This document shows positions 5,039 through 48,960 of a stretch of DNA of 64,000 bases, piece after piece. The stretch spans positions 168,684 to 232,683 of IMG/VR virus record IMGVR_UViG_3300044638_006750, one strand, 5' to 3'. A program made the position numbers and the translations under genes. The notes under the pieces were generated by a model. That model saw nothing but the letters and a program-made list of their open reading frames with translations, made no database searches and had not been told where the DNA came from. Numbering within the stretch: position 1 is the first letter of the stretch; each line of letters begins with the position of its first letter.

Positions 5039-6266
5039 AGTTATATTTTTCTTTTAGTTCTGTGATCGGCATATTTCTATTCTCTTCACTATTTAAACTT
5101 AAATTAACAATCAATGTTGTATACACATATTGTTTTTTTATATAGTTCCATAATATTTTATTGTGTTTAGATGATTCTCTATCAAAATGATAATGCATTA
5201 CTAATTTAAGCAAATAGTCGTATGGCATGTCTGGACTATGATATTTAATATACTCTGGCATTACAGACTTACAAAACTGCATATATTCCTGAAATAAAGG
5301 ATTTCCAGTAGCATATATAGAAGTTCCTCCATTAATATGGCTATTTAATAAGGACGAATATGATTCATTACTAACGCCATCATACTGAGAACCAGAAATT
5401 AAAAAAGGTTGGGATGAACAGTATTTAACCAGTCTATCTAACCACTTATCAGATAGATAACAGTCGCACTCCAACAATAAGCTAGAGTTGTATTTTCTTA
5501 ACAAATCCATAACTGCAAAGAAAACATAGTTTGGACCCGATTTATATCCGTATAGAGGGATTACATTTTCATCACAATCAGAATTTTTTCCCCAATAAAT
5601 ATCTAAGTCTTGAGGGATATCTAAATAAATAATCTCTAAATGTTTAAATTTGTTTTTTAAATTATTGATACCATTATTGTTTTCATAAAATTGTTGATCA
5701 TATTTTTTATTAGCTATAATTATTAAATCTATATTTTTTGACAAATCGGCATTGGTGTTTTTATCTATCTGGTCTAAGAAATTAAGATATGAGTTATCGG
5801 TAATTTCTTGTTCACCTGTTGCCAGTAAACAAATACATTCTAGGTTATTTTCATAGTGTTTAATGCTATCAAGCGAACAATACTGAGAGATATCTTTAAA
5901 TAATCTAGTATCTTCTTTATTGACTTCAAAATATGACAATATATGATCATTTGTAATTAAAGTTTTATCTATTTCATTAAAATCTTTTTTTAAGTTATTA
6001 ATAATTTGTTTAATATTATGATATTTTTTTTCATATAATTGAATTAGAGTATAATAATACCATTCTGAAAATTCAATATTCTTGCTTTCCAACACTAAAT
6101 TAATTTTTTCATCAATATTATCTATCAGTTCTGAGAGTTTGTAGTATGGCCAAGACTGATTGGGGTTTAAATTAATAGCTTTATATAATAGTTCTTTAGC
6201 TATTTCTGGTTGATTATTTTTAATACACAGCATTGCAGCTTTAGCGTATTCTTCCCAATTATTCAT
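5016..6266 (-). CDS. TPR-like N-terminus plus putative nucleotide-diphospho-sugar transferase domain
   Basis: AKELLYKAINLNPNQSWPYY is TPR-like; SGPN, LLECDC and HINGGTSIYA occur in the C-terminal half. Confidence 0.45.
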   Translation of the reverse strand: MNNWEEYAKAAMLCIKNNQPEIAKELLYKAINLNPNQSWPYYKLSELIDNIDEKINLVLESKNIEFSEWYYYTLIQLYEKKYHNIKQIINNLKKDFNEIDKTLITNDHILSYFEVNKEDTRLFKDISQYCSLDSIKHYENNLECICLLATGEQEITDNSYLNFLDQIDKNTNADLSKNIDLIIIANKKYDQQFYENNNGINNLKNKFKHLEIIYLDIPQDLDIYWGKNSDCDENVIPLYGYKSGPNYVFFAVMDLLRKYNSSLLLECDCYLSDKWLDRLVKYCSSQPFLISGSQYDGVSNESYSSLLNSHINGGTSIYATGNPLFQEYMQFCKSVMPEYIKYHSPDMPYDYLLKLVMHYHFDRESSKHNKILWNYIKKQYVYTTLIVNLSLNSEENRNMPITELKEKYNYAILHKK

Positions 6267-8421
6267 TATATCTTTCTATATTAGAGATGCCTAAATTTTT
6301 GATAATATCTAAGAATTTTTTTTGATTAATAGCTTGAAATTTTTTAGTGCCTTTTAAAATATCTGTTCCGCTAGAGGAACCCTCGTCGTGAATAGCCTCG
6401 CATCTTGGATCATATATGGTTTTTAATCCATAAAAATGAGCCCTGTACTGCCATTCACTATCTTCATAATACATAGAATCTAATTCATGGCTAAAAACAC
6501 CTATTTTATTAATTGCTCCTCTTTTCATATATAATAAACATCCTGAGCAATATCCAGTATATTTAGGAATATTATATTTATAAGTTTTAGGATGGTCATA
6601 TCTACCTTTATTCAAACCAGTACCATCACTGTATAACTCTGCTCCAGCTTCAGCTAGTCTTCCGTCAGGATATATTGTTTTACCTCCAGCCGCCGCTATA
6701 TAATCTGCTATATATGCGCTAGAATATAAATAATTTAACCAATATTTATCTATAATTTCAATATCATCATTAATTAATAATATATCTGACTCTTTGTATC
6801 TTGGATCAAGCATAATCTTATTATTTGGAATAATAAAATATTCATTTTGATTGTTTTTTATATATTCAATAGTATTAGGATATATTTGAACATATTTTTT
6901 TAATAGTCTCTCGGTTTCTTTATTTGTTCCATTATCTGTAACTACAATTTTATAATTTAAATAAGATGTTTTTTGTAAAATAGAATCTATACATTTACGT
7001 AATTTTTTGGGTTGATTATATGTAACTATACTAATTGTAACTTGTTTATCTTGTAGCGTGTGTTTGAGAACATTGATAGCAGACTCTTTGGATACTATTT
7101 TATCTAGATGTTCTTTCCCGGCCTCACCCAGCTGTATTTTTTGTTTATTTTTAAGACTAAAATAGTACTGTAGACCATCTATAAATTCAAAATTAGATTC
7201 TGCTATAATAGCATGGTTTTTATGTATAAAATTAATACCTTCGTTTCCTATACTGGAAGTTATAATAGGAATGCCACTCATACCAGCATCACATATTTTC
7301 CCTTTTATGCCTGCTCCCCAATTTAGAGGAGCAATTAATATACTTGTTTTTTTATATACATCAGAAATTTTTTCTATACAACCCAAGTATTCTATAGAAG
7401 GATCAGAAGAGATATTATCTTGTATTGTTTTATCTAAATTTGGACCAATAAGTAATAGTTTTGGTTTTATTTTAAGATTATTGTATATATTAGTTAGTTG
7501 AAAACTTTTAAAAATTTCTATAGATCTAATAGCACCATCTAGATTGGGACCATGGGCGTAATTTCCTATAAAAACTATATTATTCCCTAGTTTACAAGTA
7601 TGTTTGTGATGAATATTGCTTAATATTTTAATGTTATGATTATATCCTATTTCATCTTGTATATATTCTTTATCTTTTTCTGTAACGGCAAAAATTACAT
7701 TAGCAGATAAATATACTTGTTTTTCTATTTTTTTACGAACATCAAGAATGGATTGTTGTATATTTAAGTGTCCAGAGTCCTTTCCTCGCTGTTCTCTAAT
7801 CCAGTGTACATCAACAGTATCTATAATAATTTTAATATTTGGATAATATTTTTTTACGATGTCAAGATATTGATTAGCTATATCATACCAAGAAAAAATT
7901 ACATTGTCAAAAACAATATTTGATTTTTTAGCTTTTTTTAAATATGTGTCTAAGTATATTTGTTTGTCTATGTCTGGCAAAAAATATGGTATTTTTATAG
8001 CGTCTAGAGCATCTAGATATTTTTTTTTAGAGGATCCATTACAAAGAAACCAGACATTATATTGCAGATCTATTTTTAATATTTTAAGTATCTCTAATAA
8101 TCTATTGCCTCCGCTGCTGGTGTCGTAGTCTGGCGCCATTGGCGAAAAATATAATAGATTTTTACCATTATTCCAAATTTCTGGCACCAGTTCATGTGAT
8201 GAAACGGTCTCTGAAAACGATGGAACAATTTTTTTGTAAGCTCTATTCTCTTTACGTCCATATAAAATATAATGTTCTTTAGCCTTTTGTTCATCGTCTA
8301 TACCGGCGACTATGAGGTCAGGATGTAACAGCGTATAAATAATAGGATCAAAATCTTTAGGTAGCAAAAATCCATATTGCTCAACAACTCTTTTGGTATA
8401 TGTATTTGAAACCCATCTCAT
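6259..8421 (-). CDS. Bifunctional glycosyltransferase (GT4 + GT2) with an N-terminal FD..Y..HPDL..HY..YG.KE.R module
   Basis: SSGGNRL and APLNWGAGIKGKICDAGMSGIPIIT (GT4); IVTYNQ, VTDNG, LLINDDI, YYEDSEW and IHDEGSS (GT2). Confidence 0.85.
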   Translation of the reverse strand: MRWVSNTYTKRVVEQYGFLLPKDFDPIIYTLLHPDLIVAGIDDEQKAKEHYILYGRKENRAYKKIVPSFSETVSSHELVPEIWNNGKNLLYFSPMAPDYDTSSGGNRLLEILKILKIDLQYNVWFLCNGSSKKKYLDALDAIKIPYFLPDIDKQIYLDTYLKKAKKSNIVFDNVIFSWYDIANQYLDIVKKYYPNIKIIIDTVDVHWIREQRGKDSGHLNIQQSILDVRKKIEKQVYLSANVIFAVTEKDKEYIQDEIGYNHNIKILSNIHHKHTCKLGNNIVFIGNYAHGPNLDGAIRSIEIFKSFQLTNIYNNLKIKPKLLLIGPNLDKTIQDNISSDPSIEYLGCIEKISDVYKKTSILIAPLNWGAGIKGKICDAGMSGIPIITSSIGNEGINFIHKNHAIIAESNFEFIDGLQYYFSLKNKQKIQLGEAGKEHLDKIVSKESAINVLKHTLQDKQVTISIVTYNQPKKLRKCIDSILQKTSYLNYKIVVTDNGTNKETERLLKKYVQIYPNTIEYIKNNQNEYFIIPNNKIMLDPRYKESDILLINDDIEIIDKYWLNYLYSSAYIADYIAAAGGKTIYPDGRLAEAGAELYSDGTGLNKGRYDHPKTYKYNIPKYTGYCSGCLLYMKRGAINKIGVFSHELDSMYYEDSEWQYRAHFYGLKTIYDPRCEAIHDEGSSSGTDILKGTKKFQAINQKKFLDIIKNLGISNIERYNE

Positions 8422-16127: not shown

Positions 16128-16137
16128 AAATTAGATC

Positions 16138-16429: not shown

Positions 16430-16456
16430 TATCTTTTTTGTCTAGATTTTCTTTGC

Positions 16457-16486: not shown

Positions 16487-16549
16487 ATGCAGGCCCGGTA
16501 AGATAACTTATAGGGTATACTTTACCTCTAATACAATACAATCTATTAC

Positions 16550-21327: not shown

Positions 21328-21992
21328 TGCAAACTGATCATGTAGGAAGAATATTAAATCCAGAGGGTGGATATTTAGACATTAATGGGAAACCAATAAC
21401 AGGATGCTGTGCTTTTGCAGGGATTACTGCTATGCAACACGAAGGAGCGTTTGAAGTTTTTAGGTCTTTATTAGAGACAGTTAGACCTGCCAGAGTTCTC
21501 GAAATAGGAACCGCTGCTGGGGGTCTATGTCTTTACATCAGGCACACATTAAATACTTTAGGTATGTCTGATGTACCGATTAAAACTTTTGATATCTATG
21601 ATACATCTACACATAGGGTTTTAGAAAAAGAAAATAATTTAGAAGTTATTTATACTAATATATTTAGTAAAGATTATTTAAACTTAGAGAATCCTGATCT
21701 AATAGAAACTTTTATTAAATCAGAAGGTACAACGCTAGTTTTGTGTGACGGAGGAAATAAAATCAATGAGTTTAATCTAGTAGCTCCTATGTTGAAATCT
21801 GGAGATATTATTATGGCTCATGATTATTCTCCAAACCTTGAATATTTTAAAGAACACATAATGAATAAGGTGTGGTGCTGGATGGAGATTCAAGATTCTG
21901 ATGTGCAGCAGGCCGTCGATAGTAATAATTTAGAACCTTTTATGGCAACAGAATTTGCTAATGTTGTATGGTTATGTCGTCGCAAAGTATAA
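21327..21992 (+). CDS. SAM-dependent O-methyltransferase (CmcI/Methyltransf_24-like)
   Basis: LEIGTAAGG, VLCDGG and GDIIMAHDY. Confidence 0.7.
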   Translation: MQTDHVGRILNPEGGYLDINGKPITGCCAFAGITAMQHEGAFEVFRSLLETVRPARVLEIGTAAGGLCLYIRHTLNTLGMSDVPIKTFDIYDTSTHRVLEKENNLEVIYTNIFSKDYLNLENPDLIETFIKSEGTTLVLCDGGNKINEFNLVAPMLKSGDIIMAHDYSPNLEYFKEHIMNKVWCWMEIQDSDVQQAVDSNNLEPFMATEFANVVWLCRRKV

Positions 21993-22591
21993 TATCGGAA
22001 GAAGATTTTGCTTCAGTATGTTCAAAATTAACAGATGTTTTTTTTGTTCAAATCGGTGCTAATGATGGTGTGTCGTTTGATCCGATACATGATCTAGTCC
22101 TTCGTTACAACTGGTCCGGTATTCTTGTGGAGCCAGGAGCAGAAGCTTTTGATGCACTAAAACATAATTATTCTGGACGAAGCAATTTAATGTTTTTGAA
22201 TTACGCTATATCAGACCGTGATGGTTTTGTAGAATTATACTGTGGTACTACAACTCCACACTTTACGCTTGATTTTATAAAAGCAAAACATATGTTTGAC
22301 GTTGAACCCAAAGCCGTAAGAGTACCCTGTATGTCTATGAAGACACTTATGAACCGATATGTTAAAAATAACAAGATCGATATATTACAGATAGATGCCG
22401 AAGGTCATGATCATATCATACTGAACGATATGGACTTTGAACAATACTTGCCAAAGATAGTTAGATTTGAGTATGTTTCTATAGGAGACAAATTTTTAAA
22501 TAATTGCTTGACCAAACTATTACATTTCGGGTATACTGTACATTACAGTTCTGATGGTGCGGACGTTATAGCTATAAGAGAAATTAAATGA
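21968..22591 (+). CDS. FkbM-family methyltransferase
   Basis: VQIGANDG, ILVEP, IDILQIDAEGHD and PKIVRFE. Confidence 0.85.
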   Translation: MVMSSQSIISEEDFASVCSKLTDVFFVQIGANDGVSFDPIHDLVLRYNWSGILVEPGAEAFDALKHNYSGRSNLMFLNYAISDRDGFVELYCGTTTPHFTLDFIKAKHMFDVEPKAVRVPCMSMKTLMNRYVKNNKIDILQIDAEGHDHIILNDMDFEQYLPKIVRFEYVSIGDKFLNNCLTKLLHFGYTVHYSSDGADVIAIREIK

Positions 22592-36425: not shown

Positions 36426-36510
36426 TACCGGGGGCGGGATTCGAACCCGCAGCGTTTCTTATGTGAGGGATTTTAAGTCCCTTGCGTTTCGCCAATTTCG
36501 CCACCCCGGC
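36426..36510 (-). tRNA. trnL: tRNA-Leu(UAA), CCA not encoded
   Basis: GCCGGGG/CCCCGGT acceptor stem, AGGGA-CTTAAAA-TCCCT anticodon arm, long variable region and GCGGG-TTCGAAT-CCCGC T arm; followed by CTA. Confidence 0.93.
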
Positions 36511-38083: not shown

Positions 38084-38287
38084 CTACCCTTGCCGTTCTG
38101 GCTCATTTTCTTCCTCTGTGATATGCACAAAGCCATCTTCTTTTAGAAGATAAACCTTCCCAGAATCACCGTATATTTCATACATGTATGATAAATCCTC
38201 TTGAGGCATCATCTTATTGAGATAACCTCTTTCTACAACATCACCATTTTTCATTATTTCTACTCTGTTAAATCTCATTGGATTCAT
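38084..38287 (-). CDS. Hypothetical protein
   Basis: Overlaps the stop of the upstream gene. Confidence 0.5.
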   Translation of the reverse strand: MNPMRFNRVEIMKNGDVVERGYLNKMMPQEDLSYMYEIYGDSGKVYLLKEDGFVHITEEENEPERQG

Positions 38288-38994
38288 TCTAGTACATAGC
38301 TCCAGTACCTACTATCTGATTTATTTTGAAGAGCATCCCAATAGATCGACCTTGCAATATAAGATGGAACATTCAACTTGCCGCAATTAACACTCCAATG
38401 CTGTTCCATCCTCTTATACTTTGTTGTGCCTTCCTTACTTTTATTATAAGTCAGATGCTCCATGTTGTACAGTCTGAGTTGGTGAACATCCCCACACAAA
38501 ACCCTACATTCATTAGGATGTATCATTTCCAAAGCAAAACTAACTTTTGCCATACCCAAACCCACAATACGGTTGACAATCTCGTCTCTCTTCTTAACAT
38601 GATACTTCTTGGTTGTAAAATAAAAGTCTTTCGGATTCTGCCAAAACTGTTGACTAAAATTCCAAATATACTTAGTTCTATTATTATGCAAACCCACGCC
38701 TGAGTTAGCCAGTTTGTTTCTCAGAACTTCTTCACTATCTATCCATTGATCAAAGTCTTTAATGGCTTGATAACCGGAGCAGTTACCCTTCCAAGTAGTG
38801 TGAACAGAGCAATAAGCAAAAAGATACCTCCTAAAAATATCATCGGTATTCTGTGGTCGTACACTTTCCCAGTATTCCTTATACGATACAACCTTTTCTC
38901 TAGGAAAGTTTGCAAAAAATTCATCGGCCTTGCTCCTACAATAAGTTGTTTTCTTCTCTTTGTTTGTTTCGACCAGTTCCATTGTTTGCTCCAA
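38284..38994 (-). CDS. HhH-GPD-like DNA glycosylase/AP lyase (Ogg-type)
   Basis: GLHNNRTKYI, IVGLGMAKVSF (HhH with Lys) and LCGDVHQLR (catalytic Asp-His). Confidence 0.7.
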   Translation of the reverse strand: MEQTMELVETNKEKKTTYCRSKADEFFANFPREKVVSYKEYWESVRPQNTDDIFRRYLFAYCSVHTTWKGNCSGYQAIKDFDQWIDSEEVLRNKLANSGVGLHNNRTKYIWNFSQQFWQNPKDFYFTTKKYHVKKRDEIVNRIVGLGMAKVSFALEMIHPNECRVLCGDVHQLRLYNMEHLTYNKSKEGTTKYKRMEQHWSVNCGKLNVPSYIARSIYWDALQNKSDSRYWSYVLE

Positions 38995-39100: not shown

Positions 39101-39790
39101 TTAATTATCTAGTCTAAAAGTATCAACACCCGAAAAAGAAACATATCTATTATTATTTTTTTGAATAAAAATATCATTATTAGACTTAGGAATATTTTTA
39201 AATAAATCTTCTGTTAGTATAAAATCATAAATTGGTTTATATTCCATAGGTAAATTTTCATTCTTACAAGAATTATCGTTTAGAGTAAAAATAAAAGTTC
39301 TATGATTTATATGTTTATAATAAAGAGAATTATTTTGTCCAGGCACTATAAATACAACAATATAATTAAGACCAGGATATTTTATATCTATAATATTTAA
39401 AAATTTATCTATCAATAGAATTTCTTCTTCATAATTTTGTTTAATTATTGTTCTTATAAATATTGTGTTGGTTGTTTGATTATTTAATACATTATTTAAT
39501 CTTTCAATTCTACGATAAAAATCATTGATTATTTTTGGATCTAATAAATTATGATGATAAAACCCAAAATATTTTCCTCTAAAACTCAACCCTGAATATG
39601 AATAATTTTCTATTATATCTACTTCTAATTTTTTAGGAAAAAAATTTTGAAAATTAGTTTCGAAACAATCTATTATACCAGCAAAAGTTGATCTAATATT
39701 ATCAAAAGGAAGTGCTTGTTCGTATAAATTATTACCCCTCAAACTGATTGTAGTACCACACCACCCCCCTATAGAAATGAACTTATACAT
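39101..39790 (-). CDS. DUF1796-like putative papain-fold peptidase
   Basis: FISIGGWC, ALPFDNI, FYHH and FYRRIERL. Confidence 0.65.
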   Translation of the reverse strand: MYKFISIGGWCGTTISLRGNNLYEQALPFDNIRSTFAGIIDCFETNFQNFFPKKLEVDIIENYSYSGLSFRGKYFGFYHHNLLDPKIINDFYRRIERLNNVLNNQTTNTIFIRTIIKQNYEEEILLIDKFLNIIDIKYPGLNYIVVFIVPGQNNSLYYKHINHRTFIFTLNDNSCKNENLPMEYKPIYDFILTEDLFKNIPKSNNDIFIQKNNNRYVSFSGVDTFRLDN

Positions 39791-39793
39791 GGT

Positions 39794-40045
39794 TCAATCC
39801 ATTAGGTCTGGATAAAAATTTTCTATTCTACTATCCTCTATTTGTTTAGCAATGCTTGCTATAAGCTCTTCTATAGATTTTGCTTTTGTTGTATGCCAAA
39901 CATTTTGAGCTTGGTGTTGAGCCTTTACCTCTCCTATCCAATATTCTTTTTCTTTTCTAATGAAGAGACCTTTTTTGCCAATGATATCATCCAAATTCGG
40001 AGGGAATTGCTCTATTGTTTCTAATAATTTTTCGATTTCTCGCAT
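39794..40045 (-). CDS. Hypothetical protein
   Basis: ORF between island genes. Confidence 0.5.
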   Translation of the reverse strand: MREIEKLLETIEQFPPNLDDIIGKKGLFIRKEKEYWIGEVKAQHQAQNVWHTTKAKSIEELIASIAKQIEDSRIENFYPDLMD

Positions 40046-40051
40046 AATATT

Positions 40052-41206
40052 TTACTCCTTATGATTGACTATAAAAAAACTTTGATATACTTCTTTTTGA
40101 GTTAACCTAAATCTGATACCATAATTTGTAGTAAATTCTTCAACAGCCTGACAAACACCCGGAAATCTTTCTCTCATATAGTCATGTCCACAGATAAGAC
40201 CGTTATTTTTAACAACTCTTCTAGCTGCATTAAGTTCTTGTATGCATTGTTCGTATGTGTGAACAGTATCTATATATACAAAATCTAAAGTATTATCTTC
40301 TAAGGAATTTAAAAATCCAACAGAATCTTGTTTTACTACATGAATATTTTCATTATTAATAAATCTTTGTTTAACGTGATCAAATAAAATACTCCCATCT
40401 TGATATATTTTTTCTTTAGTCCCATGAATAACACCACTAAAAGTATCTACTAAATATAGTTTTTTGAATTTTTTAGTATCTATTAGGACTTTAGAAAAAT
40501 CTCCCTCAAAAACACCTAGCTCACAACCAACAATATCTTCTGGTAAGACACTCTTTATTTGATGTCTATAATCTATAAACCAGTATTTATCTACTGCATT
40601 TTGTCTATTTTGAAAATGGTTTGGTTGTTTCCATAGTGCAAAATCATCTGGTAATTCTAGTATTTGATCTTTTAATAAATGAGGAACAATCAATTTTTGA
40701 TTATATTTTTTTTCTAAAGTGGCACATAGTTGTATGTCATCTTCTAAATCATCAATAATAATATTTTTTAAATTTTTTTGTTTAGTGAATATAAATCTAC
40801 CAAGTAGAAAATCTACCGCTGTATCTTCATCTACATTAGTGATCCATCCCCAGTTTTTATAGGGCAAATATTTATGGATTTTTTTGCCAAAACCACCCAC
40901 AGCGATACAATCAGAGTTGTTATCTAACAACTTAATTAGTTCATTAAAAATTTCTATATCTTTAAATATTAAATCATCATCTAAAGAACACACAAAATCT
41001 GTCTGTGCTTGTTGTAACATCCACCATCTAGGAGGACATTTGCTATTGATGGATGATGTAATTTGCCAATCGATCCTAGAATCTTTGGGCCAGACTCCAC
41101 TATTATCCCATAGAAAAATTTTTACTTTTCCATATAAAAAATCGAGTATTTTGTTTAAATTATCTGGTCTTCGCCAATTCAACAAGCCTACTGTTAAATT
41201 TATCAT
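40052..41206 (-). CDS. GT-A glycosyltransferase fused to a class I methyltransferase
   Basis: LLNWRR, LWDN and SLDDD (GT); ELGVFEG, VYIDTVHTY and GHDY (MTase). Confidence 0.8.
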   Translation of the reverse strand: MINLTVGLLNWRRPDNLNKILDFLYGKVKIFLWDNSGVWPKDSRIDWQITSSINSKCPPRWWMLQQAQTDFVCSLDDDLIFKDIEIFNELIKLLDNNSDCIAVGGFGKKIHKYLPYKNWGWITNVDEDTAVDFLLGRFIFTKQKNLKNIIIDDLEDDIQLCATLEKKYNQKLIVPHLLKDQILELPDDFALWKQPNHFQNRQNAVDKYWFIDYRHQIKSVLPEDIVGCELGVFEGDFSKVLIDTKKFKKLYLVDTFSGVIHGTKEKIYQDGSILFDHVKQRFINNENIHVVKQDSVGFLNSLEDNTLDFVYIDTVHTYEQCIQELNAARRVVKNNGLICGHDYMRERFPGVCQAVEEFTTNYGIRFRLTQKEVYQSFFIVNHKE

Positions 41207-43058
41207 ACTTAAGTTTTTTCCTTTTTAATAAATTAGAATAGTATTGTAAAATTAATTCATTTGATGAGTATGAGTTTTTAGTTAAATGCACAAAAAGAAC
41301 AGGACTATCATCTTCTATAGTATACCATTTTTTATGATCACGATATGTGTGTATTACATTAGAATTCCATGGTGCGATATTACAGCCTTTATTTTGTGAT
41401 ATTTTAACTATATTATTATATTCTAAAGCCATAATATCTAAATATTTTTGATCATCAAATAACCCAGCTTGAAAATTTTTTTCACATTTCCACTCTACTG
41501 CTTTTTTCCACCAATTAATTGCAGGCAATCCCTGTTTGGAAGAACCAACAAATCCCGCATTAAAAAAACCATCAGTAAAATTTAGAGCATATTGATACCC
41601 TTCAGGAATTAATGACCTATGGTGTTTAGTTAATAATACTCCGTCTATATCATCAAAAAGAAAATTCCAATAGTTAATAAATAATATGTCACAATCTATA
41701 TATATAACTTTATCATATGATTGTAAAAAGTATTCAATTAAAACAGGTTTAAGATACCATCTTATAATGTCGTTATTTGATTTATATTTATCTGGTATGA
41801 GCCTATTAATTGCTTCTGGTAAAGACTGGAAAGATATTTTATTAAATTGAAACTCTTGAAATTGTTCATCTATAATAACGCTTTTATAATCGGAATATTT
41901 ATTATATTTCATTGCATTTTTTAAACATATTAAAGCTTCTTTTTTATAATTTCTATCAACAATAGTAAATAATAGTGTTTTGGTATTGGAACTGAATGGG
42001 TTGGAGATTAATAACCTCTCCTGTTCTTTATAATGGTCAAACCCTATTTTTTGTCTTTCTAACATTTTAAATTTCTCTATATCTAAAGTATCACCAAACC
42101 ATTTATAATGATTAGTAATAAAAGTTTGATAGAAAAATTTTATATATTGAGCATTATACACTGAGTGATGTCCTGCTAGAATATCTATTTTATAGTGCAT
42201 CAGTATGCATTTCGCTGAATCTGCCAACATTATATCTTTAGTAATATTTTTTTTAATAGGAAATTGCCTAATAATAGGCTGATATCTTTCTATATTTTTA
42301 GGTATGTCATAAGACATACTAATTCTATCTAATAATACTGAACGAACAAAATAAGAACCTGTTTTTATACATTCATCTCTTAATTTTTTAAAAGATTGAT
42401 ATGGGGATATATCATGAAATTCATCTAGATCAGCCACAACATACCAACATTTTGTTTGTGATTTAATATTGTTGATTCTTATAGAATCATTTGTACCATT
42501 ATGTCCTATCGGACTAGACATTGAACCATCATTATAGACAATAAACTTTAATTTATTTAATATTATTATATCTAGATTAAGAGATAAGACATATAATTTA
42601 ACAGATTCATCGCATATAAAAATAATATTATCTATATCTAAATTAGTATAGTGTTCTAAAAAATGAGGTAATAAATCTTTATATCTATTTGATTTTGAAT
42701 AAATATTACAAATTAAAATTATATCATTCGATACTACATCTGGAGAAGAATTATAATATTGTTCAGGATTGGTCGATGCTAATTTATCTTGATAGTTTTT
42801 AAAAAATTTTGAATTTGATTGACCGTATTTCATCCAATGAAAATATAATCTTTGTTTATCTGATATTCCTTGATCTGAACAGTAAGGCTGATAAAAATCT
42901 ATACATTCAGGATATTCTGATTGATAAAAAATTTCATCGAAACTAGAATCTAATATATTACTCTTATAAAAATCTTCTATCATAATAATTATCTTAATTT
43001 TTCCAGTAGGCTGGGGTTTAGTTTCATAAAATTTGAGCGAATATATTCTGGGCCACAA
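41160..43058 (-). CDS. Dual glycosyltransferase (GT2-like + GT8-like) with an N-terminal FDE.FY module
   Basis: HFLEHY..L and VADLDEF; YIDCDI, FNAGFVG, DDQKYLD and NIAPWN. True start is probably about 42983. Confidence 0.8.
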   Translation of the reverse strand: MWPRIYSLKFYETKPQPTGKIKIIIMIEDFYKSNILDSSFDEIFYQSEYPECIDFYQPYCSDQGISDKQRLYFHWMKYGQSNSKFFKNYQDKLASTNPEQYYNSSPDVVSNDIILICNIYSKSNRYKDLLPHFLEHYTNLDIDNIIFICDESVKLYVLSLNLDIIILNKLKFIVYNDGSMSSPIGHNGTNDSIRINNIKSQTKCWYVVADLDEFHDISPYQSFKKLRDECIKTGSYFVRSVLLDRISMSYDIPKNIERYQPIIRQFPIKKNITKDIMLADSAKCILMHYKIDILAGHHSVYNAQYIKFFYQTFITNHYKWFGDTLDIEKFKMLERQKIGFDHYKEQERLLISNPFSSNTKTLLFTIVDRNYKKEALICLKNAMKYNKYSDYKSVIIDEQFQEFQFNKISFQSLPEAINRLIPDKYKSNNDIIRWYLKPVLIEYFLQSYDKVIYIDCDILFINYWNFLFDDIDGVLLTKHHRSLIPEGYQYALNFTDGFFNAGFVGSSKQGLPAINWWKKAVEWKCEKNFQAGLFDDQKYLDIMALEYNNIVKISQNKGCNIAPWNSNVIHTYRDHKKWYTIEDDSPVLFVHLTKNSYSSNELILQYYSNLLKRKKLKYDKFNSRLVELAKTR

Positions 43059-44254
43059 CCATTTCTTTTTGTTTTATTTTGAACTTTTATATCTATAACT
43101 TTACATAAATTTTCTATAGAAATAGAACCATCGAATTCAAAATATATATCCTCAATTATTTTTTGTTTATGATCTGTATATATATTATTTTTAAATGTTA
43201 TTACCTTATTATTAATATATAAATTTTCTAATACAACATATGGACAAGGATCCTCTTCTGAAAATAATATAAAATAATCTATGGCTTTATAATAAATATA
43301 AGGAAGACTAACTTCTGGTATATGATATATATTATGCATTGATGGAAAATAGTTTGCGGTCCCGCCTATCCATAAAAAATTATATTGAGGGTATATTTTG
43401 GAGATTTCGATAAATAGATTGGGATTTTTTCTATTTTCGGTTTGTCCGCACATACCTATAGTTATTTTAGAATGATTTAAGTATCCATAGCTATTAATAA
43501 TAGCTGGAATATTTTTTTTGGATTCTGAATCTATTAAACTTAAAGTATCATCTAAAAATATTGGTTGCTGTATTTCTGGTCTATAATTATGTTTTATATA
43601 AAACTGGTTTTGTATTCTATCAGATACAACATATGTTGGCAGAATACCATATCTTCCGTATGCGTGTTCTGGTTCATGACTATGTATAATAATATTATTG
43701 TAATGATTATATAGTTTAATAAATTGCACAAAACAAATATTTATACCATTAATATAAAAAATCTTTGGCTGTAATTTTTCATATATATAACATAATAATA
43801 ATAAATTTTGTTTATATGAAATAATATCATTATTATTTATTTTGTATTTATTATATAAATTTACATTATATTGCGCATCTAAAATACAAACTTTATATCC
43901 TTGATTTTGTAAATATTTATATAGACTGAATAGGTGGTGGCTGGCTCCATATAGATTAGACACACTATTTACTAAAATTATACTATTTTTATGTTGTTCA
44001 TATTGATTAATAACTTTAAATAAAGACTGATTAATATTATAGATATACTTATTAACATTTAAAGTTGACGATACTTCGTCTTTAGGAAGACTATAATTCA
44101 TATAATGAAAATATAATCTATGTTTATCATCTATATTATTATGTTTACAATAAGGCTGATAAAAATCTTTTGTTTCCGGATATCTTGCAGCATAAAAATG
44201 CTCATCGAAGTCCATATCTATTTTATTGTTTTTGTAAAATTCAAGAATATCCAT
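42989..44254 (-). CDS. GT4-like glycosyltransferase with an N-terminal FDE.FY module
   Basis: YGASHHL, HSHE, GQTENRKNP, FLWIG and SEEDPCPYVVLE. Confidence 0.8.
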   Translation of the reverse strand: MDILEFYKNNKIDMDFDEHFYAARYPETKDFYQPYCKHNNIDDKHRLYFHYMNYSLPKDEVSSTLNVNKYIYNINQSLFKVINQYEQHKNSIILVNSVSNLYGASHHLFSLYKYLQNQGYKVCILDAQYNVNLYNKYKINNNDIISYKQNLLLLCYIYEKLQPKIFYINGINICFVQFIKLYNHYNNIIIHSHEPEHAYGRYGILPTYVVSDRIQNQFYIKHNYRPEIQQPIFLDDTLSLIDSESKKNIPAIINSYGYLNHSKITIGMCGQTENRKNPNLFIEISKIYPQYNFLWIGGTANYFPSMHNIYHIPEVSLPYIYYKAIDYFILFSEEDPCPYVVLENLYINNKVITFKNNIYTDHKQKIIEDIYFEFDGSISIENLCKVIDIKVQNKTKRNGCGPEYIRSNFMKLNPSLLEKLR

Positions 44255-44465
44255 TACTGCAAAACATTTTTAAGATTAATCTGAAATATTGTTTGATTTA
44301 GTTCTATTAGTTCTTTATTTTTTGTAGGTAGTATACTATATAGATTCGTATCTAAACAATAGAAAAAAAGTTATCTATGCCTAGTCGATCAAACTCCGTA
44401 ATTCTATCTAAACATTGTCCTAGATACTTAGTATTAGCAAAAATTACTATCCTATAGTTTGACAT
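44254..44465 (-). pseudogene. Frameshifted small ORF (GT77/nucleotide-diphospho-sugar transferase N-terminus-like)
   Basis: The ATG at 44465 lies 3 nt after the upstream stop and the TAA overlaps the next ATG (TAATG). The span is 212 nt; one extra T in the T7 run (44363-44369) gives a 70-aa ORF YRIVIFANTKY...GIDNFFFYCLD. Confidence 0.5.
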
Positions 44466-44468
44466 AGA

Positions 44469-45023
44469 TTATTCATGTTCATAACTTTCAGTAGACCAAC
44501 CATCCTTGGTTACTGTTACACGCACATGATCTCCAAATATAGATTTATAACAATCTTCATCTATAGATGATAGAATTTGACCAATATCTTCTAAAATAGC
44601 AAGTCTATTTTTGGTTTCGTCAATTGAGCCACTCTCTATGCGATTGATTTCATCTTCTAGATAGCTATAGCCATATTTTTCTTTTTTACATTCCTCTATT
44701 CTTTTTTGCAGTGCTGCTATCTCTTTCTTTGGGTTGTGTAATACATCTAAAAATTGTCTAAGTTCATAGGTGCTTTCGTCTTGTTCTGAACCATTAATAG
44801 AAATATAATCTGTATGGGCGCTAAAAACACACTCATCTCCATCATTAAAATATGGAGTATATTGAGTCCAACTAAAACTTTTAAGGTCTGGGTATTTTTT
44901 GAAAATATCTTTGAAACCTTTAGATATCAGCTTTGAACTTTCTTTTTGTGCCTGTTTTTCTAGTTTCTCTATTTGTTTTTGAATATCGTTGAGCTTAGAT
45001 TTAATTTCTTTAATATTTACCAT
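44469..45023 (-). CDS. Conserved phage hypothetical (WTQYTPYFNDG motif)
   Basis: FSWTQYTPYFNDGDECVF; coiled coils. Confidence 0.65.
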   Translation of the reverse strand: MVNIKEIKSKLNDIQKQIEKLEKQAQKESSKLISKGFKDIFKKYPDLKSFSWTQYTPYFNDGDECVFSAHTDYISINGSEQDESTYELRQFLDVLHNPKKEIAALQKRIEECKKEKYGYSYLEDEINRIESGSIDETKNRLAILEDIGQILSSIDEDCYKSIFGDHVRVTVTKDGWSTESYEHE

Positions 45024-45034
45024 TATGGTATCTC

Positions 45035-45439
45035 CTAGTCAAAATTAACAGTTGTGTATTTTTTGGTTTTTTCTATCTTCTTAAAACTATCAGGAATACC
45101 TTCCCTGCCATTGTTCATCCAGTTTTTAATTTCAATTTCTTGTAAATAATCTTGTGCTGTAGGAATAAATTTCATTCCAAAGTCTTCGAGAATATGTTGT
45201 TCTCCAATGTCTCTTACAGAAACTTCTCTACCATCACTATTGATTATAATAGGCCCAAAAATTTTTTCAAGTGGGCCGTCTGCTCCTATAAACCAACTAT
45301 TATGAGTCAAACATCTATGCCTATTATCACCAATACAATCTTTACTACTATCCATTAGATTATGAATAGGCATATAATCCTCTGGTTGTCCACCAAATTT
45401 TTTAACACTATTTTTAGCGTGAATCCAAGGTTTAGACAT
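45035..45439 (-). CDS. DUF6915-like protein
   Basis: PWIHAKNSVKKFGG..EDY..IH..MDSSK....DNRHR..THN.W and GEQHILED. Confidence 0.6.
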   Translation of the reverse strand: MSKPWIHAKNSVKKFGGQPEDYMPIHNLMDSSKDCIGDNRHRCLTHNSWFIGADGPLEKIFGPIIINSDGREVSVRDIGEQHILEDFGMKFIPTAQDYLQEIEIKNWMNNGREGIPDSFKKIEKTKKYTTVNFD

Positions 45440-46746
45440 TATACAGTCCTAGCAACCCCATGAAGGATTTTAAAAGTAGGAAAACGAAGACTTATACCAC
45501 CTTCTTGGTTTTGACTCTCACTAAAATATTGAACAGTAATAATTTTTCCTAGAATTTTCTTGGGATTCTTATAAAAATCTTGTCTTTGTTCAATACTAAA
45601 GCCCGACCCAACCCTAACAGGATGATTTTTATGCATGATGGTGACACAAGACAGCATAGTTTCCTCACATTCTGCCCCATCCTTAACATAGCGAAATGGT
45701 CCCATTTCAACATCGACTACTTCATATTCATCATCGCTAAAACTTTTATACTTGAGTAGTTCTTTACTTCTTTTCCCCTTATACGGAGCATCTGCCCGAA
45801 GCATGAGTCCTTCCCACTTTTCTTCGCTAGAATAAGAGATCAAAGACTCAAAATCATCGTCTGTATCAACCCGTACTTGCTCAAGTAAACTTAGACAATC
45901 ACACTCATTCTTTTTCATAATCTCTTTAAGATTATTGAGTCTAATACTGAACGGTCGATTCTTTTCTCCCTTTTTAGTATAAAATTCATCGTGAGAAATC
46001 ATATCAAAAATTTTATAAGAAGGATTCTGGATAGTATGATCTTTCTTGCGGAGTTCTTTCATTACTCCTTGAAAATCTTCATTACCGTCTTCATCAAGAA
46101 GGCACAATTCTCCATCTAATACTACATTAGATATACCGAGAGCCTTAATGCCACCAGCAACAATATCCAAAGTTTCAAAAGTTTTTCCCGTGCGGGAATA
46201 AAAAGAAGTGTTACCATTATCATCAACAACAGCAATACATCTAGCACCATCGATCTTCCGACTAACATACCAGCCATCCTTCCAGTCTACAATATTAGGA
46301 TCGTACTTATCTGCCAAAGCGACACTAAACTCTGGTATATGATCTGGTATAGCCTTATTAATAATTTTATCACCAGCACGAGTTTTTAGATCCTTATCAA
46401 TAATACAATGAATCAGCTCCTCGTATTCTTCATGCTGATCAATGAAACTATTAACAGCACCAATAGCATCATGGCCGGTAATAGAACGAGAGTTAAGAGC
46501 ATCCAAAAGCTTAAAAATAGTGTCATGAGTCTTACCTTTAAGAGAGAACTTTTTCTTTAGATTATCGCTGGTAACATTATATTGCCACAATGGATGATAT
46601 GTATAAAGCAAAATTTTCTTCGTGAAATTTGCCGCTTCACTGTTATGATTGCAATAATCCTCTATAATGCCCTGTTTATCAATAGTGCTACTAGTAGCAC
46701 GAAGATCCCGAACCATCCCCCAAACATAATCAAAATGATGAGTCAT
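45439..46746 (-). CDS. lig: ATP-dependent DNA ligase
   Basis: KIDGAR (motif I), LDGEL, IFD, EGLMLR, LLKYK and LRFPTF. Start moved to MTHHF after the CACAGGAG RBS. Confidence 0.93.
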   Translation of the reverse strand: MTHHFDYVWGMVRDLRATSSTIDKQGIIEDYCNHNSEAANFTKKILLYTYHPLWQYNVTSDNLKKKFSLKGKTHDTIFKLLDALNSRSITGHDAIGAVNSFIDQHEEYEELIHCIIDKDLKTRAGDKIINKAIPDHIPEFSVALADKYDPNIVDWKDGWYVSRKIDGARCIAVVDDNGNTSFYSRTGKTFETLDIVAGGIKALGISNVVLDGELCLLDEDGNEDFQGVMKELRKKDHTIQNPSYKIFDMISHDEFYTKKGEKNRPFSIRLNNLKEIMKKNECDCLSLLEQVRVDTDDDFESLISYSSEEKWEGLMLRADAPYKGKRSKELLKYKSFSDDEYEVVDVEMGPFRYVKDGAECEETMLSCVTIMHKNHPVRVGSGFSIEQRQDFYKNPKKILGKIITVQYFSESQNQEGGISLRFPTFKILHGVARTV

Positions 46747-46771
46747 CCAAATTTTCTCCTGTGTTTGTCCT

Positions 46772-46800
46772 AGTATAGCACACGACGATCTCTTTGTCAA
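46772..46800 (-). promoter_or_regulatory. Sigma70 promoter of the ligase gene
   Basis: TTGACA-aagagatcgtcgtgtgc (17)-TATACT. Confidence 0.8.
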
Positions 46801-47009
46801 GTATCGTCTATTCGTTTGCGTTTCTTGAACACAATAGCCAATGACTGCACCAAATCACTTCCTGCCGTTTGAAATATACACGGTAAAATAGCATGTATAA
46901 TTAAACAGAGACCGGCTAGAATACAAACTACACCATGAAAAGTAGCAAATTTAAAATGCTGATAATAAGTCATATTATTTTCTTGTATATGTTTTTTTAT
47001 ACTATTCAT
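46797..47009 (-). CDS. Small membrane protein (DUF6356-like)
   Basis: KHIQENNMTYYQHFKFA...IIHAILPCIF. Confidence 0.55.
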   Translation of the reverse strand: MNSIKKHIQENNMTYYQHFKFATFHGVVCILAGLCLIIHAILPCIFQTAGSDLVQSLAIVFKKRKRIDDT

Positions 47010-47349
47010 ATCTTTTGGGTCTCGATAAAAAGTAATTCATAGCGTTAACTACGGATTGAAAGTTGTCTCCGAGCTTGCCTATCCCAGTATTACATGGTTC
47101 ACATAGCCATCCTCTAAAGCTATTATCTTCATGATCGTGGTCTAAGCACCATTTGTATGGTATTTTTCCGCAACACTCACAGACTTCTGGTTTTGGTGGT
47201 GCCTTTTTGTGTAATTTGTTTCTCACCTTCGATTGTTTTTTTACACATTTTCTACATCTGCTATCTAGATTGTCTTTGTACATACTATGTTTGGGAAAAC
47301 TAGCTTTATTTTTTCTTTTACCGCAGTACGAACAAATTTTTCTAGTCAT
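47002..47349 (-). CDS. Endonuclease VII-like protein
   Basis: CECCG...LDHDH....RGWLC..CNTGIG..GD; N-terminal Zn finger. Confidence 0.85.
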   Translation of the reverse strand: MTRKICSYCGKRKNKASFPKHSMYKDNLDSRCRKCVKKQSKVRNKLHKKAPPKPEVCECCGKIPYKWCLDHDHEDNSFRGWLCEPCNTGIGKLGDNFQSVVNAMNYFLSRPKRYE

Positions 47350-48593
47350 GAGAATAATTCATGAATCACTTTACCATTATTGGCAATTTTCATGGGTCTA
47401 CCATTTTTGGCAGTGAATATAGTTTCTAATGAAATATCTATAGATTTTAGTACACTAGCCATTAAGTCTTGAGAGGTATATGGTTCAGAAATTACTTCTT
47501 TACCATCTTTACTCGTCTCACCAACAATTACTCCCTTTTTAAAACCAGCCCCTCCAACAACAACACTCCAACTTCTTGCCCAATGATCTCTACCGGCATT
47601 TCCATTAATATTTGGTGTGCGTCCAAATTCTCCCATCCATACTATTGCTGTGCTATCCAACAACCCTCTGTTATTTAAATCTTCTATTAAAGCACTCATA
47701 GCCTTGTCCATTTCGGGAAGTTTTTGATTTTGCAATGTTGGGAATACATCTTGATGGTTATCCCACCCACCAAGATCTACTTCTATAAATGGCGCCCCTA
47801 TTTCTACTAGACGCCTAGCCATCAAACAACCTCTGCCAAACCCTGTATTTCCATATCGTTCCTGAATTTGCTTGGGTTCTTTGGACACTTTAAAAACATC
47901 CATCTGAGAACTACTCATCAACTTTACTGTTTTGGTTAAAAGCTTGGCATGGTCATTGGCATACTCTCCACGATTTTCTTTTATAAATTTGTCTTCTATT
48001 GTTTTGAGCATTTGTAATCTTTGATTAACTCTGTTAGGCTCTATACCCATATCTAAATCACGAACTGTCCCATTAGAATTAACCACAAATGGAGCATAAG
48101 TAGCTCCTAAAAAACCTGGACCTACACTTGGACTCCCGATACTAACGAATGGAGGAATGTCAAGCTCTGGAATACTAGATATTAATTCATGAGATACAAC
48201 AGAACCATAGCTTGGATGTTCTATATTTGGATTAGGAACATAGCCAGTATGTAAATAATAGCGTCCTCTCATATGATCTGCTTCTCTTGTACTCATACTT
48301 CGTACAATATTCATGTGATGCATTTGTTTTGACATAAGAGGTAAATGCTCACAAATTTCAATGCCGTCAGCAGACGTTGAGATGGGTTTAAATGGCCCCC
48401 CAGTTGGACTCCCAGGCTTTAAATCCCATATGTCAATGGTGCTAGGACCGCCGCCCATCCATAGCAGAATGACAGACTTGGTTTTTTTTGTCGTATCAGC
48501 AGTATTAGCTAATATAGAATTAGCAAAATATGTTGAAGAAGATGCCAGACAAGAAGATGCTGCTAAATGTGATAAAAAATGTCTTCTGTTCAT
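47346..48593 (-). CDS. DUF1501-family protein with a Tat signal
   Basis: MNRRHFL, LLWMGGGPSTIDIWDLKP, ARRLVEIG, GGWDNH, WMGEFGRTP and GRDHW. Confidence 0.9.
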   Translation of the reverse strand: MNRRHFLSHLAASSCLASSSTYFANSILANTADTTKKTKSVILLWMGGGPSTIDIWDLKPGSPTGGPFKPISTSADGIEICEHLPLMSKQMHHMNIVRSMSTREADHMRGRYYLHTGYVPNPNIEHPSYGSVVSHELISSIPELDIPPFVSIGSPSVGPGFLGATYAPFVVNSNGTVRDLDMGIEPNRVNQRLQMLKTIEDKFIKENRGEYANDHAKLLTKTVKLMSSSQMDVFKVSKEPKQIQERYGNTGFGRGCLMARRLVEIGAPFIEVDLGGWDNHQDVFPTLQNQKLPEMDKAMSALIEDLNNRGLLDSTAIVWMGEFGRTPNINGNAGRDHWARSWSVVVGGAGFKKGVIVGETSKDGKEVISEPYTSQDLMASVLKSIDISLETIFTAKNGRPMKIANNGKVIHELFS

Positions 48594-48608
48594 ATAATAT
48601 GCTTTAAG

Positions 48609-48960
48609 TGGAGGCGAGGGGAGTCGAACCCCTGTCCTATCAGTAGTTCATTATATCTTCTACAAGTTTAGGTTGTTCATAAGTTTTATGAAAGATTAAA
48701 GAACAAACAACATTCATCTTTCCGTACCAACTAATCTCAGGCTAGAACCCGTTGGCAATTCTAGCAGCCGAAGGCTTTTACGACGATTTTTTGGACGCTA
48801 CCTTCATTGCTTCCTAAAATCGTTACTGCTTTTTATTAAGCAGCAAGTGCTAACTGATTTGCGCCAGTTAAAGCGTTTAATCTGGTTTTATAGTAGCCAC
48901 CAGATCAACTACTACTTGCCAATATAAATCTGCTATTGTAGTCGAAACCTTTACGCCCCC
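48609..48960 (-). ncRNA. ssrA: tmRNA, tag peptide (A)GANQLALAA
   Basis: 5' GGGGGCGTAAAGGTTTCGAC; 3' GGGGTTCGACTCCCCTCGCCTCCA; G3-U pair; tag ORF 48865-48833 after TTTAACT, ending TAA TAA; CCA not encoded. Confidence 0.95.

What the first reader, a model, noticed from the sequence alone, without database searches (positions are those of the whole stretch)
42825..44215. Shared N-terminal FDE.FY...YP..DFYQPYC...RLYFH..Y module on tandem glycosyltransferases
ORF 44254 has FDEHFYAARYPETKDFYQPYCKHNNIDDKHRLYFHYMNY. ORF 43058 has FDEIFYQSEYPECIDFYQPYCSDQGISDKQRLYFHWMKYG. The rest of the two proteins are unrelated folds (GT-B versus GT-A). A related FDP..Y...HPDL...HY..YG.KE.R module starts ORF 8421. 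A common tag on different GTs suggests a docking or targeting domain that assembles a glycosylation complex on one substrate.
Basis: seen in the sequence. Interest (0 to 1): 0.6.

Follow-up and report, generated by a model that had tools for sequence, protein, structure and literature searches.

The report
Portable tag on phage glycan enzymes
Two neighbouring sugar-transferring enzymes of a 233-kb lake-water phage begin with the same small, independently folding 55-residue domain; it is a virus-specific version of a widespread but uncatalogued bacterial repeat attached to many unrelated sugar-modifying enzymes, probably to steer them to a common work site.

Summary
P0001 (window 42989-44254, minus strand) and P0002 (41160-42983, minus strand) share 31 of 53 N-terminal residues (E 5e-17) and nothing else. 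P0003 (6259-8421) carries a shorter relative (profile-profile probability 95%). The window is the end of a complete 232,683-bp freshwater jumbo phage.

The module is a real, portable domain:
- AlphaFold2 gives a confident five-helix fold (pLDDT 88) with no match in the PDB, Pfam or NCBIfam.
- About 170 protein clusters carry it, and every context I examined was viral.
- It is usually N-terminal and sits on at least 20 catalytic families: many glycosyltransferase families, sulfotransferases and methyltransferases.
- The P0001 catalytic domain also occurs without it.
- Synonymous sites between copies are saturated while the protein is conserved.
- The tagged genes lie in a hypervariable island next to the DNA ligase gene, and inside that island only the module-coding piece is conserved between relatives.

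Its ancestor is the bacterial repeat FDxxxY..NPDV..HYxxxGxxEGR. That repeat occurs N-terminally on glycan enzymes and C-terminally on secreted RTX and cadherin-type proteins.

Most likely the module is a non-catalytic targeting domain that holds interchangeable enzymes at a constant element of the glycan assembly site. The partner is unknown.

The parts
44090..44254 (-). Long-type module of P0001 (codons 1-55)
   Evidence: BLASTP against P0002. AlphaFold2 pLDDT 87.9, pTM 0.73, five short helices. Bridged by contigs of other runs.
42989..44254 (-). P0001, 421 aa: module plus a GT-B-like (Glycos_transf_1-like) catalytic domain. First gene of the island operon.
   Evidence: Homologues: P0107 (passes PF00534), P0120 (two modules), L028:13492-15687 (no module).
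42819..42983 (-). Long-type module of P0002 (codons 1-55)
   Evidence: 70% DNA identity to the P0001-type module.
41160..42983 (-). P0002, 607 aa: module plus a GT-A-like domain (Glyco_tranf_2_4) plus a second C-terminal domain with no Pfam family match. Starts 5 nt after the P0001 stop codon.
   Evidence: Orthologues P0048 and P0082 (PF13704, 44.2 bits).
8236..8364 (-). Short-type module of P0003 (residues ~20-62), of the form FD..Y...HPDL...HY..YG..ENR
   Evidence: hhalign of long-type against short-type profiles, 95.2%. Orthologues keep it.
6259..8421 (-). P0003, 720 aa: short module plus GT4 (Glyco_trans_1_4) plus GT2, inside the large glycan cluster
40052..41206 (-). Third gene of the island operon, 384 aa: N-terminal part without a family match plus Methyltransf_24. 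It has no module.
39101..40045 (-). Remaining island genes: a DUF1796 papain-like protein (39101-39790) and an 83-aa ORF (39794-40045)
44255..44468 (.). Intergenic region upstream of P0001. It is 96% identical in L001 together with module codons 1-51, after which homology stops.
   Evidence: The 26-nt direct repeat flanking a 2.6-kb cassette in L001 is shown.
44469..47010 (-). Conserved left flank of the island: 184-aa and 134-aa phage genes and the ATP-dependent DNA ligase (45439-46800)
38284..38994 (-). Conserved right flank of the island: Ogg-like DNA glycosylase gene

Best explanation
The shared stretch is a portable, autonomously folding, non-catalytic domain of about 55 residues. It is a virus-specific 'long' variant of the bacterial repeat FDxxxY..(N/Y)PD(V/L)..HYxxxGxxEGR, lengthened by an insertion of about 8-12 residues. 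It works as an address label. Fused usually to the N-terminus of interchangeable glycan-tailoring catalytic domains (glycosyltransferases of many families, sulfotransferases, methyltransferases), it most likely holds them at one constant element of the glycan assembly site. That element could be the carrier or primer end of the acceptor, the substrate protein, or a scaffold. The catalytic cassettes behind the label are swapped freely in a hypervariable island. Shown here: the domain's existence, fold confidence, portability, protein-level selection and ancestry. Inferred: the targeting function and the constancy of the partner. Unknown: what the partner is.
For: (1) The module folds on its own: AF2 with 150 homologues gives pLDDT 87.9 and pTM 0.73, five short helices. 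(2) It is promiscuous. A profile search of 1.84 billion representatives finds 172 clusters (126 at E<=1e-10). Of 212 module hits, 121 are N-terminal, 46 internal (mostly second tandem copies) and 12 C-terminal. The 91 longer carriers match 33 Pfam families, among them GT2, GT7C, GT25, GT47, RgpF, CAP59, GT8, GT11, GT1/4, GT64, NodZ/FUT8, four sulfotransferase families and a methyltransferase. (3) It is separable. The P0001 catalytic domain occurs with one module (P0001, P0107), with two (P0120) and with none behind a different N-terminus (L028:13492-15687). (4) Selection acts on the protein, not the DNA. Over 435 module pairs the median pS is 0.705 (saturated) and the median pN is 0.345. (5) It is constant inside a variable island. 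In relatives L019, L020, L034 and L039 the slot between the ligase gene and the Ogg-like gene holds unrelated genes. In L019 and L020 the only piece inside that slot still alignable as DNA is the ~150-bp module (72-84% identity, similar to the ligase gene at 67-75%). In L034 and L039 the module is still found, but only at the protein level. A conserved label beside changing enzymes argues for a conserved partner. (6) Ancestry: long and short types align profile to profile at 95.2% and occur in tandem in single proteins (P0153, P0164, L028:11226-13394). The canonical short repeat is N-terminal on bacterial FkbM and other methyltransferases, GT2, GT4, GT9, RgpF, WsaF, WbsX and LicD enzymes. (7) The neighbourhood is glycan biosynthesis: nucleotide-sugar dehydratases and epimerases, methyltransferases, a sulfotransferase-like gene and other GTs.
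Against: There is no binding data of any kind and the partner is unidentified. Only 3 of roughly 20 glycan genes in this genome carry the tag, so it is not needed by most enzymes of the pathway. The ancestral repeat is also found at the C-terminus of secreted RTX, cadherin, Calx-beta, Ig-like and metalloprotease proteins, so its general role cannot be tied to a cytoplasmic assembly site. The fold has no solved relative to lean on (best Z 3.0-3.6).
Confidence: 0.4

Rival explanations
1. Module-module docking: tags on different enzymes bind each other and assemble a multi-enzyme glycosylation complex.
For: Several tagged genes lie side by side in many phages (this window; L013, L016, L020, L024, L027/L028). 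Many proteins carry two modules in tandem. AF2 models such a pair as one compact unit (P0020:1-132, pLDDT 86.8, pTM 0.69, linker pLDDT 75-81), which is higher than two free 60-residue domains should give.
Against: The complete relative G002 has one tagged gene only. Bacterial carriers often hold 2-8 repeats in one chain, which fits avidity for a ligand as well as self-association. No PAE or interface could be inspected.
Confidence: 0.2
2. Glycan-binding module: the repeat binds a polysaccharide, and tandem copies give avidity. It would keep cytoplasmic enzymes on the growing chain and keep secreted proteins on surface glycans.
For: The module is rich in aromatic residues (13 Phe/Tyr among the first 55 residues of P0001, read). 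It occurs on cytoplasmic glycan enzymes and on extracellular RTX, cadherin and Calx-beta proteins. Tandem arrays of up to 8 copies exist (P0148). There is precedent for a cytoplasmic carbohydrate-binding module in O-antigen export, the C-terminal domain of Wzt (PMC9445017, abstract seen).
Against: The phage module is highly conserved (55-70% identity) while the enzymes behind it, and so presumably the glycans, vary. A small all-helical fold is unusual for carbohydrate-binding modules (established knowledge: most are beta-sandwiches).
Confidence: 0.2
3. Peripheral membrane or carrier-lipid anchor: the module places soluble enzymes at the inner face of the cytoplasmic membrane, where undecaprenyl-linked intermediates are.
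For: The tagged enzymes have no signal peptide or transmembrane segment, because the module starts at residue 1. The invariant Arg46, His50 and Tyr residues could bind a phosphate head group (inference only). E. coli WbdD shows that such pathways need membrane recruitment (PMC3482155, abstract seen).
Against: The same repeat occurs on secreted proteins. No amphipathic helix or basic patch was demonstrated.
Confidence: 0.1
4. The conservation is at the DNA level: the 5' ends are homology patches for cassette exchange, or a leftover of a local duplication, and the protein segment has no function of its own.
For: Between the window and L001, homology (96%) runs through the upstream region and module codons 1-51 and stops there. 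A 2.6-kb cassette in L001 is flanked by a 26-nt direct repeat.
Against: Synonymous sites between modules are saturated while amino acids are kept. The fold is confident. Homology reaches bacterial repeats that share no DNA similarity.
Confidence: 0.05

Closest known systems
Bacterial repeat FDxxxY(L)xx(N/Y)PDVxxAGxxPLxHYxxxGxxEGR (no Pfam, NCBIfam or PDB entry found here)
   Same: Same motif skeleton (FD, Y, P-D/E, HY, G). Profile-profile probability 95.2%. Same habit of sitting N-terminally on glycan-modifying enzymes, singly or in tandem. P0003 carries this short type.
   Different: The P0001/P0002 type has an insertion (consensus DFYQPYC) and an extra N-terminal helix, has mostly lost the EGR, and carries a near-invariant Cys. 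It was found only on viral contigs and not in 185,579 prokaryote species genomes by two pattern scans.
C-terminal carbohydrate-binding domain of the O-antigen ABC transporter Wzt (PMC9445017)
   Same: A non-catalytic cytoplasmic module that ties a glycan-pathway protein to a defined part of the acceptor. It is a model for how the tag could work.
   Different: No sequence or fold relation was found. The Wzt domain sits on a transporter, not on enzymes, and glycan binding by the present module is untested.
Recruitment and scaffold regions of ABC-transporter-dependent O-antigen enzymes, for example E. coli O9a WbdD (PMC3482155) and the modular Klebsiella enzymes (PMC11231755)
   Same: Multi-module glycan enzymes whose non-catalytic parts position the catalytic modules at the membrane.
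   Different: Those use coiled coils and amphipathic helices specific to each system. Here a single small domain family is reused across more than 20 catalytic families.
Docking tags of other multi-enzyme systems (dockerin-cohesin of cellulosomes, docking domains of PKS/NRPS); recalled knowledge, not tested
   Same: A short common tag on diverse catalytic subunits.
   Different: No receptor (cohesin-like) protein was identified and there is no sequence or fold similarity.
PRD domains (LicT, AtxA, Mga regulators)
   Same: They recur at the top of the structure searches as small helical bundles.
   Different: Z is only 2.6-3.6 with 4-9% identity, far below the level that means a shared fold. Not a member.

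Membership tests
Bacterial FD..Y..NPDV..HY...G..EGR repeat (uncurated family) | FD-x3-Y followed three residues later by (N/Y/H)-P-(D/E) | tested here: met
   P0001 has FDEHFY...YPE, P0002 has FDEIFY...YPE and P0003 has FDPIIY...HPD.
Bacterial FD..Y..NPDV..HY...G..EGR repeat (uncurated family) | H-(Y/F/W)-x3-G followed by E-(G/N)-R | tested here: inconclusive
   The His is invariant in all types. P0002 keeps HW..YG, P0001 has HY..YS (no Gly), and neither keeps EGR. P0003 keeps HY..YG..ENR. Intermediates such as P0019, P0067 and P0091 have the long insertion together with G..EGR.
Bacterial FD..Y..NPDV..HY...G..EGR repeat (uncurated family) | Statistically supported homology between independent profiles | tested here: met
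   hhalign of A7 (40 long-type modules, no short type included) against A5 (15 short-type repeats): probability 95.2%, E 2.8e-8, 38 columns. Both types occur in tandem in single proteins.
Bacterial FD..Y..NPDV..HY...G..EGR repeat (uncurated family) | Fusion to glycan-modifying catalytic domains | tested here: met
Thioredoxin / protein disulfide isomerase (WCGHC region) | CxxC active site within a full thioredoxin fold of about 100 residues, with significant profile match | tested here: not met
   Best PDB profile hits have E 0.05-2 over about 25 residues (..DFY.PYC against ..DFWAPWC). There is a single Cys, no CxxC, the domain is 55 residues and the model is all-helical.
Any Pfam-A or NCBIfam family (for the module) | Score above the curated cut-off | tested here: not met
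   There was no hit above any curated cut-off for the long, tandem or canonical forms. The best E-value was 0.0016, and every score was below its cut-off.
PRD domain | Structural match well above background (Z of 8 or more for helical folds) | tested here: not met
   Z 2.6-3.6. ESM Atlas TM 0.51 to one PRD cluster.
GT-B glycosyltransferase, Glycos_transf_1 (catalytic part of P0001) | Pfam PF00534 above its gathering score | tested here: inconclusive
   P0001 itself scores 14.4 bits against 26.4. Its homologue P0107 (phmmer E 3e-33) scores 27.1 bits against 26.4. Membership is by transitive homology only, and no structure was predicted.
GT-A glycosyltransferase, Glyco_tranf_2_4 (first catalytic part of P0002) | Pfam PF13704 above its gathering score | tested here: inconclusive
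   P0002 scores 21.5 bits against 27.5. Its orthologue P0082 scores 44.2 bits.
Docking-tag systems (dockerin-cohesin type) | A dedicated receptor protein that binds the tag | not testable with these tools
   No candidate receptor was identified. The only complex job (module against module) returned no verdict.

The most novel reading that the evidence does not exclude
The module and its bacterial ancestor form an undescribed, widespread domain family with a new small helical fold. It would act as a universal address label of glycan assembly lines, binding a constant feature such as the polyprenyl-pyrophosphate or primer end of the acceptor. The phage long variant would then plug phage-encoded enzymes into a host or phage assembly site, so that a phage can rewrite a glycan simply by swapping the catalytic cassette behind a fixed tag.
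Probability: 0.25. Interest if true: 0.75.

Novelty: new variant of a known kind. Interest (0 to 1): 0.55.

Why it matters
Non-catalytic modules decide where and on what glycosyltransferases act, yet few are understood in bacteria and almost none in phages. This one small domain family has no Pfam, NCBIfam or PDB match in my searches, but it is attached to more than 20 catalytic families in phages. Its ancestral repeat is attached to at least 640 proteins found in a single length-limited search. If it is an address label, it would explain how large phages diversify glycans by cassette exchange. It would point to the constant element of the pathway, whether carrier, scaffold or substrate. It would also give glyco-engineers a portable tag for recruiting foreign enzymes. 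At the least it deserves a curated family, and its structure and ligand can be tested directly.

Tried and rejected
- **Thioredoxin-like reading of DFYQPYC.** Only weak PDB profile hits (E>=0.05), no CxxC and a helical model. Rejected.
- **Family and sequence libraries.** Pfam, NCBIfam and PDB sequence searches on the long, tandem and canonical forms found nothing above any cut-off.
- **Structure searches.** Foldseek PDB, VIA-align wide and ESM Atlas, on the single and the tandem model, gave no meaningful match.
- **Complex prediction of the P0001 and P0002 modules.** The tool's verdict was 'no answer' (score 0.00, below the mark of 0.34, controls not run). I use it neither for nor against binding.
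- **Cultured-phage database.** No DNA or tblastn match to the island or the module.
- **Phage lineage.** T4-like cyanophage is not supported: no Gp23 Pfam hit (although that search rang in no control genome either) and no psbA. 'Moraphage' (PMC12619734) is not supported by the one hallmark I tested, because there is no HSP70/DnaK hit.
- **Literature.** Motif-string and topic searches gave nothing on this repeat.
- **Promoter scan of the island.** 50 sites found against 50 expected. Uninformative.
- **Genome scans.** Two pattern scans of prokaryote genomes for the long type found none, but pattern scans have limited sensitivity.
- **False positive.** P0022 (3179 aa, repetitive) has no module motif.
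- **Word search with the P0003 module.** It found only orthologues.
- **Read laying.** It showed presence in other lakes but no informative joints.
Full report
**What is there**

The window is the last 64 kb of a 232,683-bp virus record that CheckV rates as complete. It is a jumbo tailed phage:
- a distant large terminase and portal protein;
- an rIIA-like gene and an ATP-dependent DNA ligase;
- structural genes of up to 4,284 codons;
- a tmRNA gene and a tRNA-Leu gene.

It has no near relative among cultured phages. Its DNA is found in lake-water and freshwater metagenomes from many separate studies.

On the minus strand, three genes run head to tail after a 214-bp spacer downstream of the 184-aa gene:
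- P0001 (42989-44254, 421 aa);
- P0002 (41160-42983, 607 aa, starting 5 nt after the P0001 stop codon);
- a 384-aa protein with a Methyltransf_24 domain (40052-41206).

**The observation**

P0001 and P0002 share 31 of 53 residues at their N-termini (E 5e-17) and nothing else of significance.

Their catalytic parts belong to different classes:
- P0001 is GT-B-like. Its homologue P0107 passes the Glycos_transf_1 cut-off.
- P0002 is GT-A-like. Its orthologue P0082 passes the Glyco_tranf_2_4 cut-off.

P0003 (6259-8421; GT4 plus GT2) starts with a shorter motif, FD..Y...HPDL...HY..YG..ENR. A profile of 40 long-type modules, built without any short-type sequence, aligns to a profile of short-type repeats with 95.2% probability and E 2.8e-8. 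The long type differs by an insertion of about 8-12 residues.

No further copy exists in the genome. Error-free contigs from four other freshwater runs bridge both junctions between module and catalytic domain.

**It is a domain**

With an alignment of 150 modules, AlphaFold2 models residues 1-55 of P0001 as five short helices, with pLDDT 87.9 and pTM 0.73.

No solved or predicted structure matches it convincingly:
- Foldseek against the PDB found nothing.
- VIA-align gave a best Z of 3.0 for the single model and 3.6 for the tandem model, with PRD domains recurring only at noise level.
- The ESM Atlas gave TM of about 0.5 or less.

No Pfam, NCBIfam or PDB sequence matches the long, tandem or canonical form above a cut-off. 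A faint likeness of DFYQPYC to the thioredoxin WCGHC region is chance: E>=0.05, one Cys only and a helical model.

**It is portable**

A word search restricted to residues 1-58 found the module on 14 proteins with unrelated Pfam content: RgpF, GT2, GT47, fucosyltransferases and a CST-I sialyltransferase-like protein.

A profile search of 1.84 billion representative proteins found 172 clusters, 126 of them at E<=1e-10. One, P0022, is a repetitive false positive.

Of 212 module hits, 121 are N-terminal, 46 internal (mostly the second of a tandem pair), 12 C-terminal and 33 on short ORFs or fragments.

The 91 longer carriers match 33 Pfam families: GT2, GT7C, GT25, GT47, RgpF, CAP59, GT8, GT11, GT1/4, GT64, NodZ/FUT8, four sulfotransferase families and a methyltransferase.

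The P0001 catalytic domain itself occurs with one module (P0001, P0107), with two (P0120), and with none behind a different N-terminus (L028:13492-15687).

Every genomic context I inspected is viral. That covers 27 IMG/VR loci and four metagenomic loci (L011-L014), the latter with glycan clusters beside genes such as RNR, PhoH, HNH and CsrA. Two pattern scans of 185,579 prokaryote species genomes found no long-type copy.

**Where it sits**

In relatives L019, L020, L034 and L039, the slot between the DNA ligase gene and an Ogg-like gene holds different genes each time.
- In L019 and L020 the only piece inside the slot that still aligns as DNA is the ~150-bp module (72-84% identity). That is similar to the flanking ligase gene (67-75%).
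- In L034 and L039 the module is still present but is detected only at the protein level.

In the closest relative, L001, 96% identity runs through the upstream spacer and module codons 1-51 and then stops. L001 also has an extra 2.6-kb cassette whose first gene (P0004) carries its own module on a CAP59/GT2-like enzyme. A 26-nt direct repeat flanks that cassette.

The module's conservation is not a DNA-level effect. Over 435 module pairs, synonymous differences are saturated (median pS 0.705) while non-synonymous differences are held at 0.345.

**Ancestry**

The short type is the canonical bacterial repeat FDxxxY(L)xx(N/Y)PDVxxAGxxPLxHYxxxGxxEGR. One Bacteroidales MAG protein, P0148, is made of eight copies.

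A single length-limited search with P0148 returned 640 proteins:
- In enzymes the repeats are N-terminal. These include FkbM and other methyltransferases, GT2, GT4, GT9, PF04577, RgpF, WsaF, WbsX and LicD.
- In secreted-type proteins they are C-terminal. These include HemolysinCabind (RTX), cadherin, Calx-beta, Ig-like and matrixin/serralysin proteins.

Long and short types occur side by side in single phage proteins (P0153, P0164, L028:11226-13394).

**How it most likely works**

The anatomy fits a targeting label that keeps interchangeable enzymes at one constant element of the assembly site. That anatomy is a small stable domain, terminal, non-catalytic, reused on many catalytic families and conserved while the enzymes change. 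I give this reading 0.4. Which element it binds is open.

Four narrower readings compete:
Tagged genes are adjacent in several phages, and an AF2 tandem model is compact (pTM 0.69 for 132 residues). However, one complete relative has a single tagged gene, and the complex test gave no verdict.
- **Glycan binding (0.2).** This fits the aromatic richness, the tandem arrays and the extracellular carriers. It fits poorly with a conserved tag beside variable enzymes and with an all-helical fold.
- **Membrane or carrier-lipid anchor (0.1).** This would suit soluble enzymes acting on lipid-linked intermediates, but the repeat also occurs on secreted proteins.
- **Pure DNA-level or vestigial explanation (0.05).** largely excludes it.

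**Comparison and verdict**

The kind of thing, an accessory targeting module on glycan enzymes, is known. Examples are the Wzt carbohydrate-binding domain (PMC9445017) and WbdD recruitment (PMC3482155).

This particular family is not in the libraries I searched, has no solved structure, and its long variant appears confined to large aquatic phages. I therefore rate it a new variant of a known kind, with interest 0.55.

Noticed in passing
window 48606-48960 (-): A full-length tmRNA gene in a phage genome (Rfam RF00023, 119.6 bits; ARAGORN tag peptide GANQLALAA). L019, L020 and L039 show DNA similarity over part of this gene. It could hint at the host.
   Followed up: partly
window 36426-36510 (-): A tRNA-Leu gene (anticodon TAA), found by ARAGORN and Rfam.
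   Followed up: no
window 3561-22000: A large glycan-biosynthesis cluster of about 18 kb. It holds two NAD-dependent sugar dehydratase/epimerase genes, Methyltransf_24, a sulfotransferase-like gene, WcbI-like, MGAT2-like, HtrL_YibB and a GlcNAc-transferase (PF11397, 253 bits). Elsewhere the genome has a GlmS-like amidotransferase (genome 42006-43832).
   Followed up: partly
L001 3121-3149 and 5758-5786, corresponding to window 44468-44496: A 2.6-kb cassette (a tagged CAP59/GT2-like enzyme, a methyltransferase-like gene and a sulfotransferase-like gene) that is present in L001 but absent from the window. It is flanked by a 26-nt direct repeat made of the last codons of the 184-aa gene. This looks like cassette gain or loss by short-repeat recombination.
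   Followed up: yes
L001 6001-6279: A 92-aa ORF made of a module 93% identical to that of P0001 followed by an unrelated 37-residue tail and a stop codon. It is either a stand-alone module or a truncated gene; the contig ends 81 nt later. Many hits are also short (39-200 aa), and most of those may be contig-end fragments.
   Followed up: partly
window 47346-48593 (-): A DUF1501 protein (Pfam 340.7 bits) encoded by the phage. From memory, this family is typical of Planctomycetota and Verrucomicrobiota, so it may be a host clue.
   Followed up: no
window 562-2196 (-): An IMPDH/GMP-reductase-family gene (185.6 bits) next to a nucleoside 2-deoxyribosyltransferase-like gene. This suggests nucleotide salvage or base modification.
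   Followed up: no
window 39101-39790 (-): A DUF1796 (putative papain-like cysteine peptidase) gene inside the variable glycan island (98.9 bits).
   Followed up: no
genome 64020-129571 (outside the window; loci L005-L008): A run of giant ORFs (4284, 1763, 2219, 1923 and 2266 aa), presumably virion fibres or decoration proteins. They are candidate substrates for the phage's glycosylation genes.
   Followed up: no
window 39500-45400 in runs X2, X3, X4 and X6: Identical short contigs of this exact island occur in lake and freshwater metagenomes from different studies dated 2016, 2020 and 2024. This island genotype is therefore widespread and stable in nature.
   Followed up: partly
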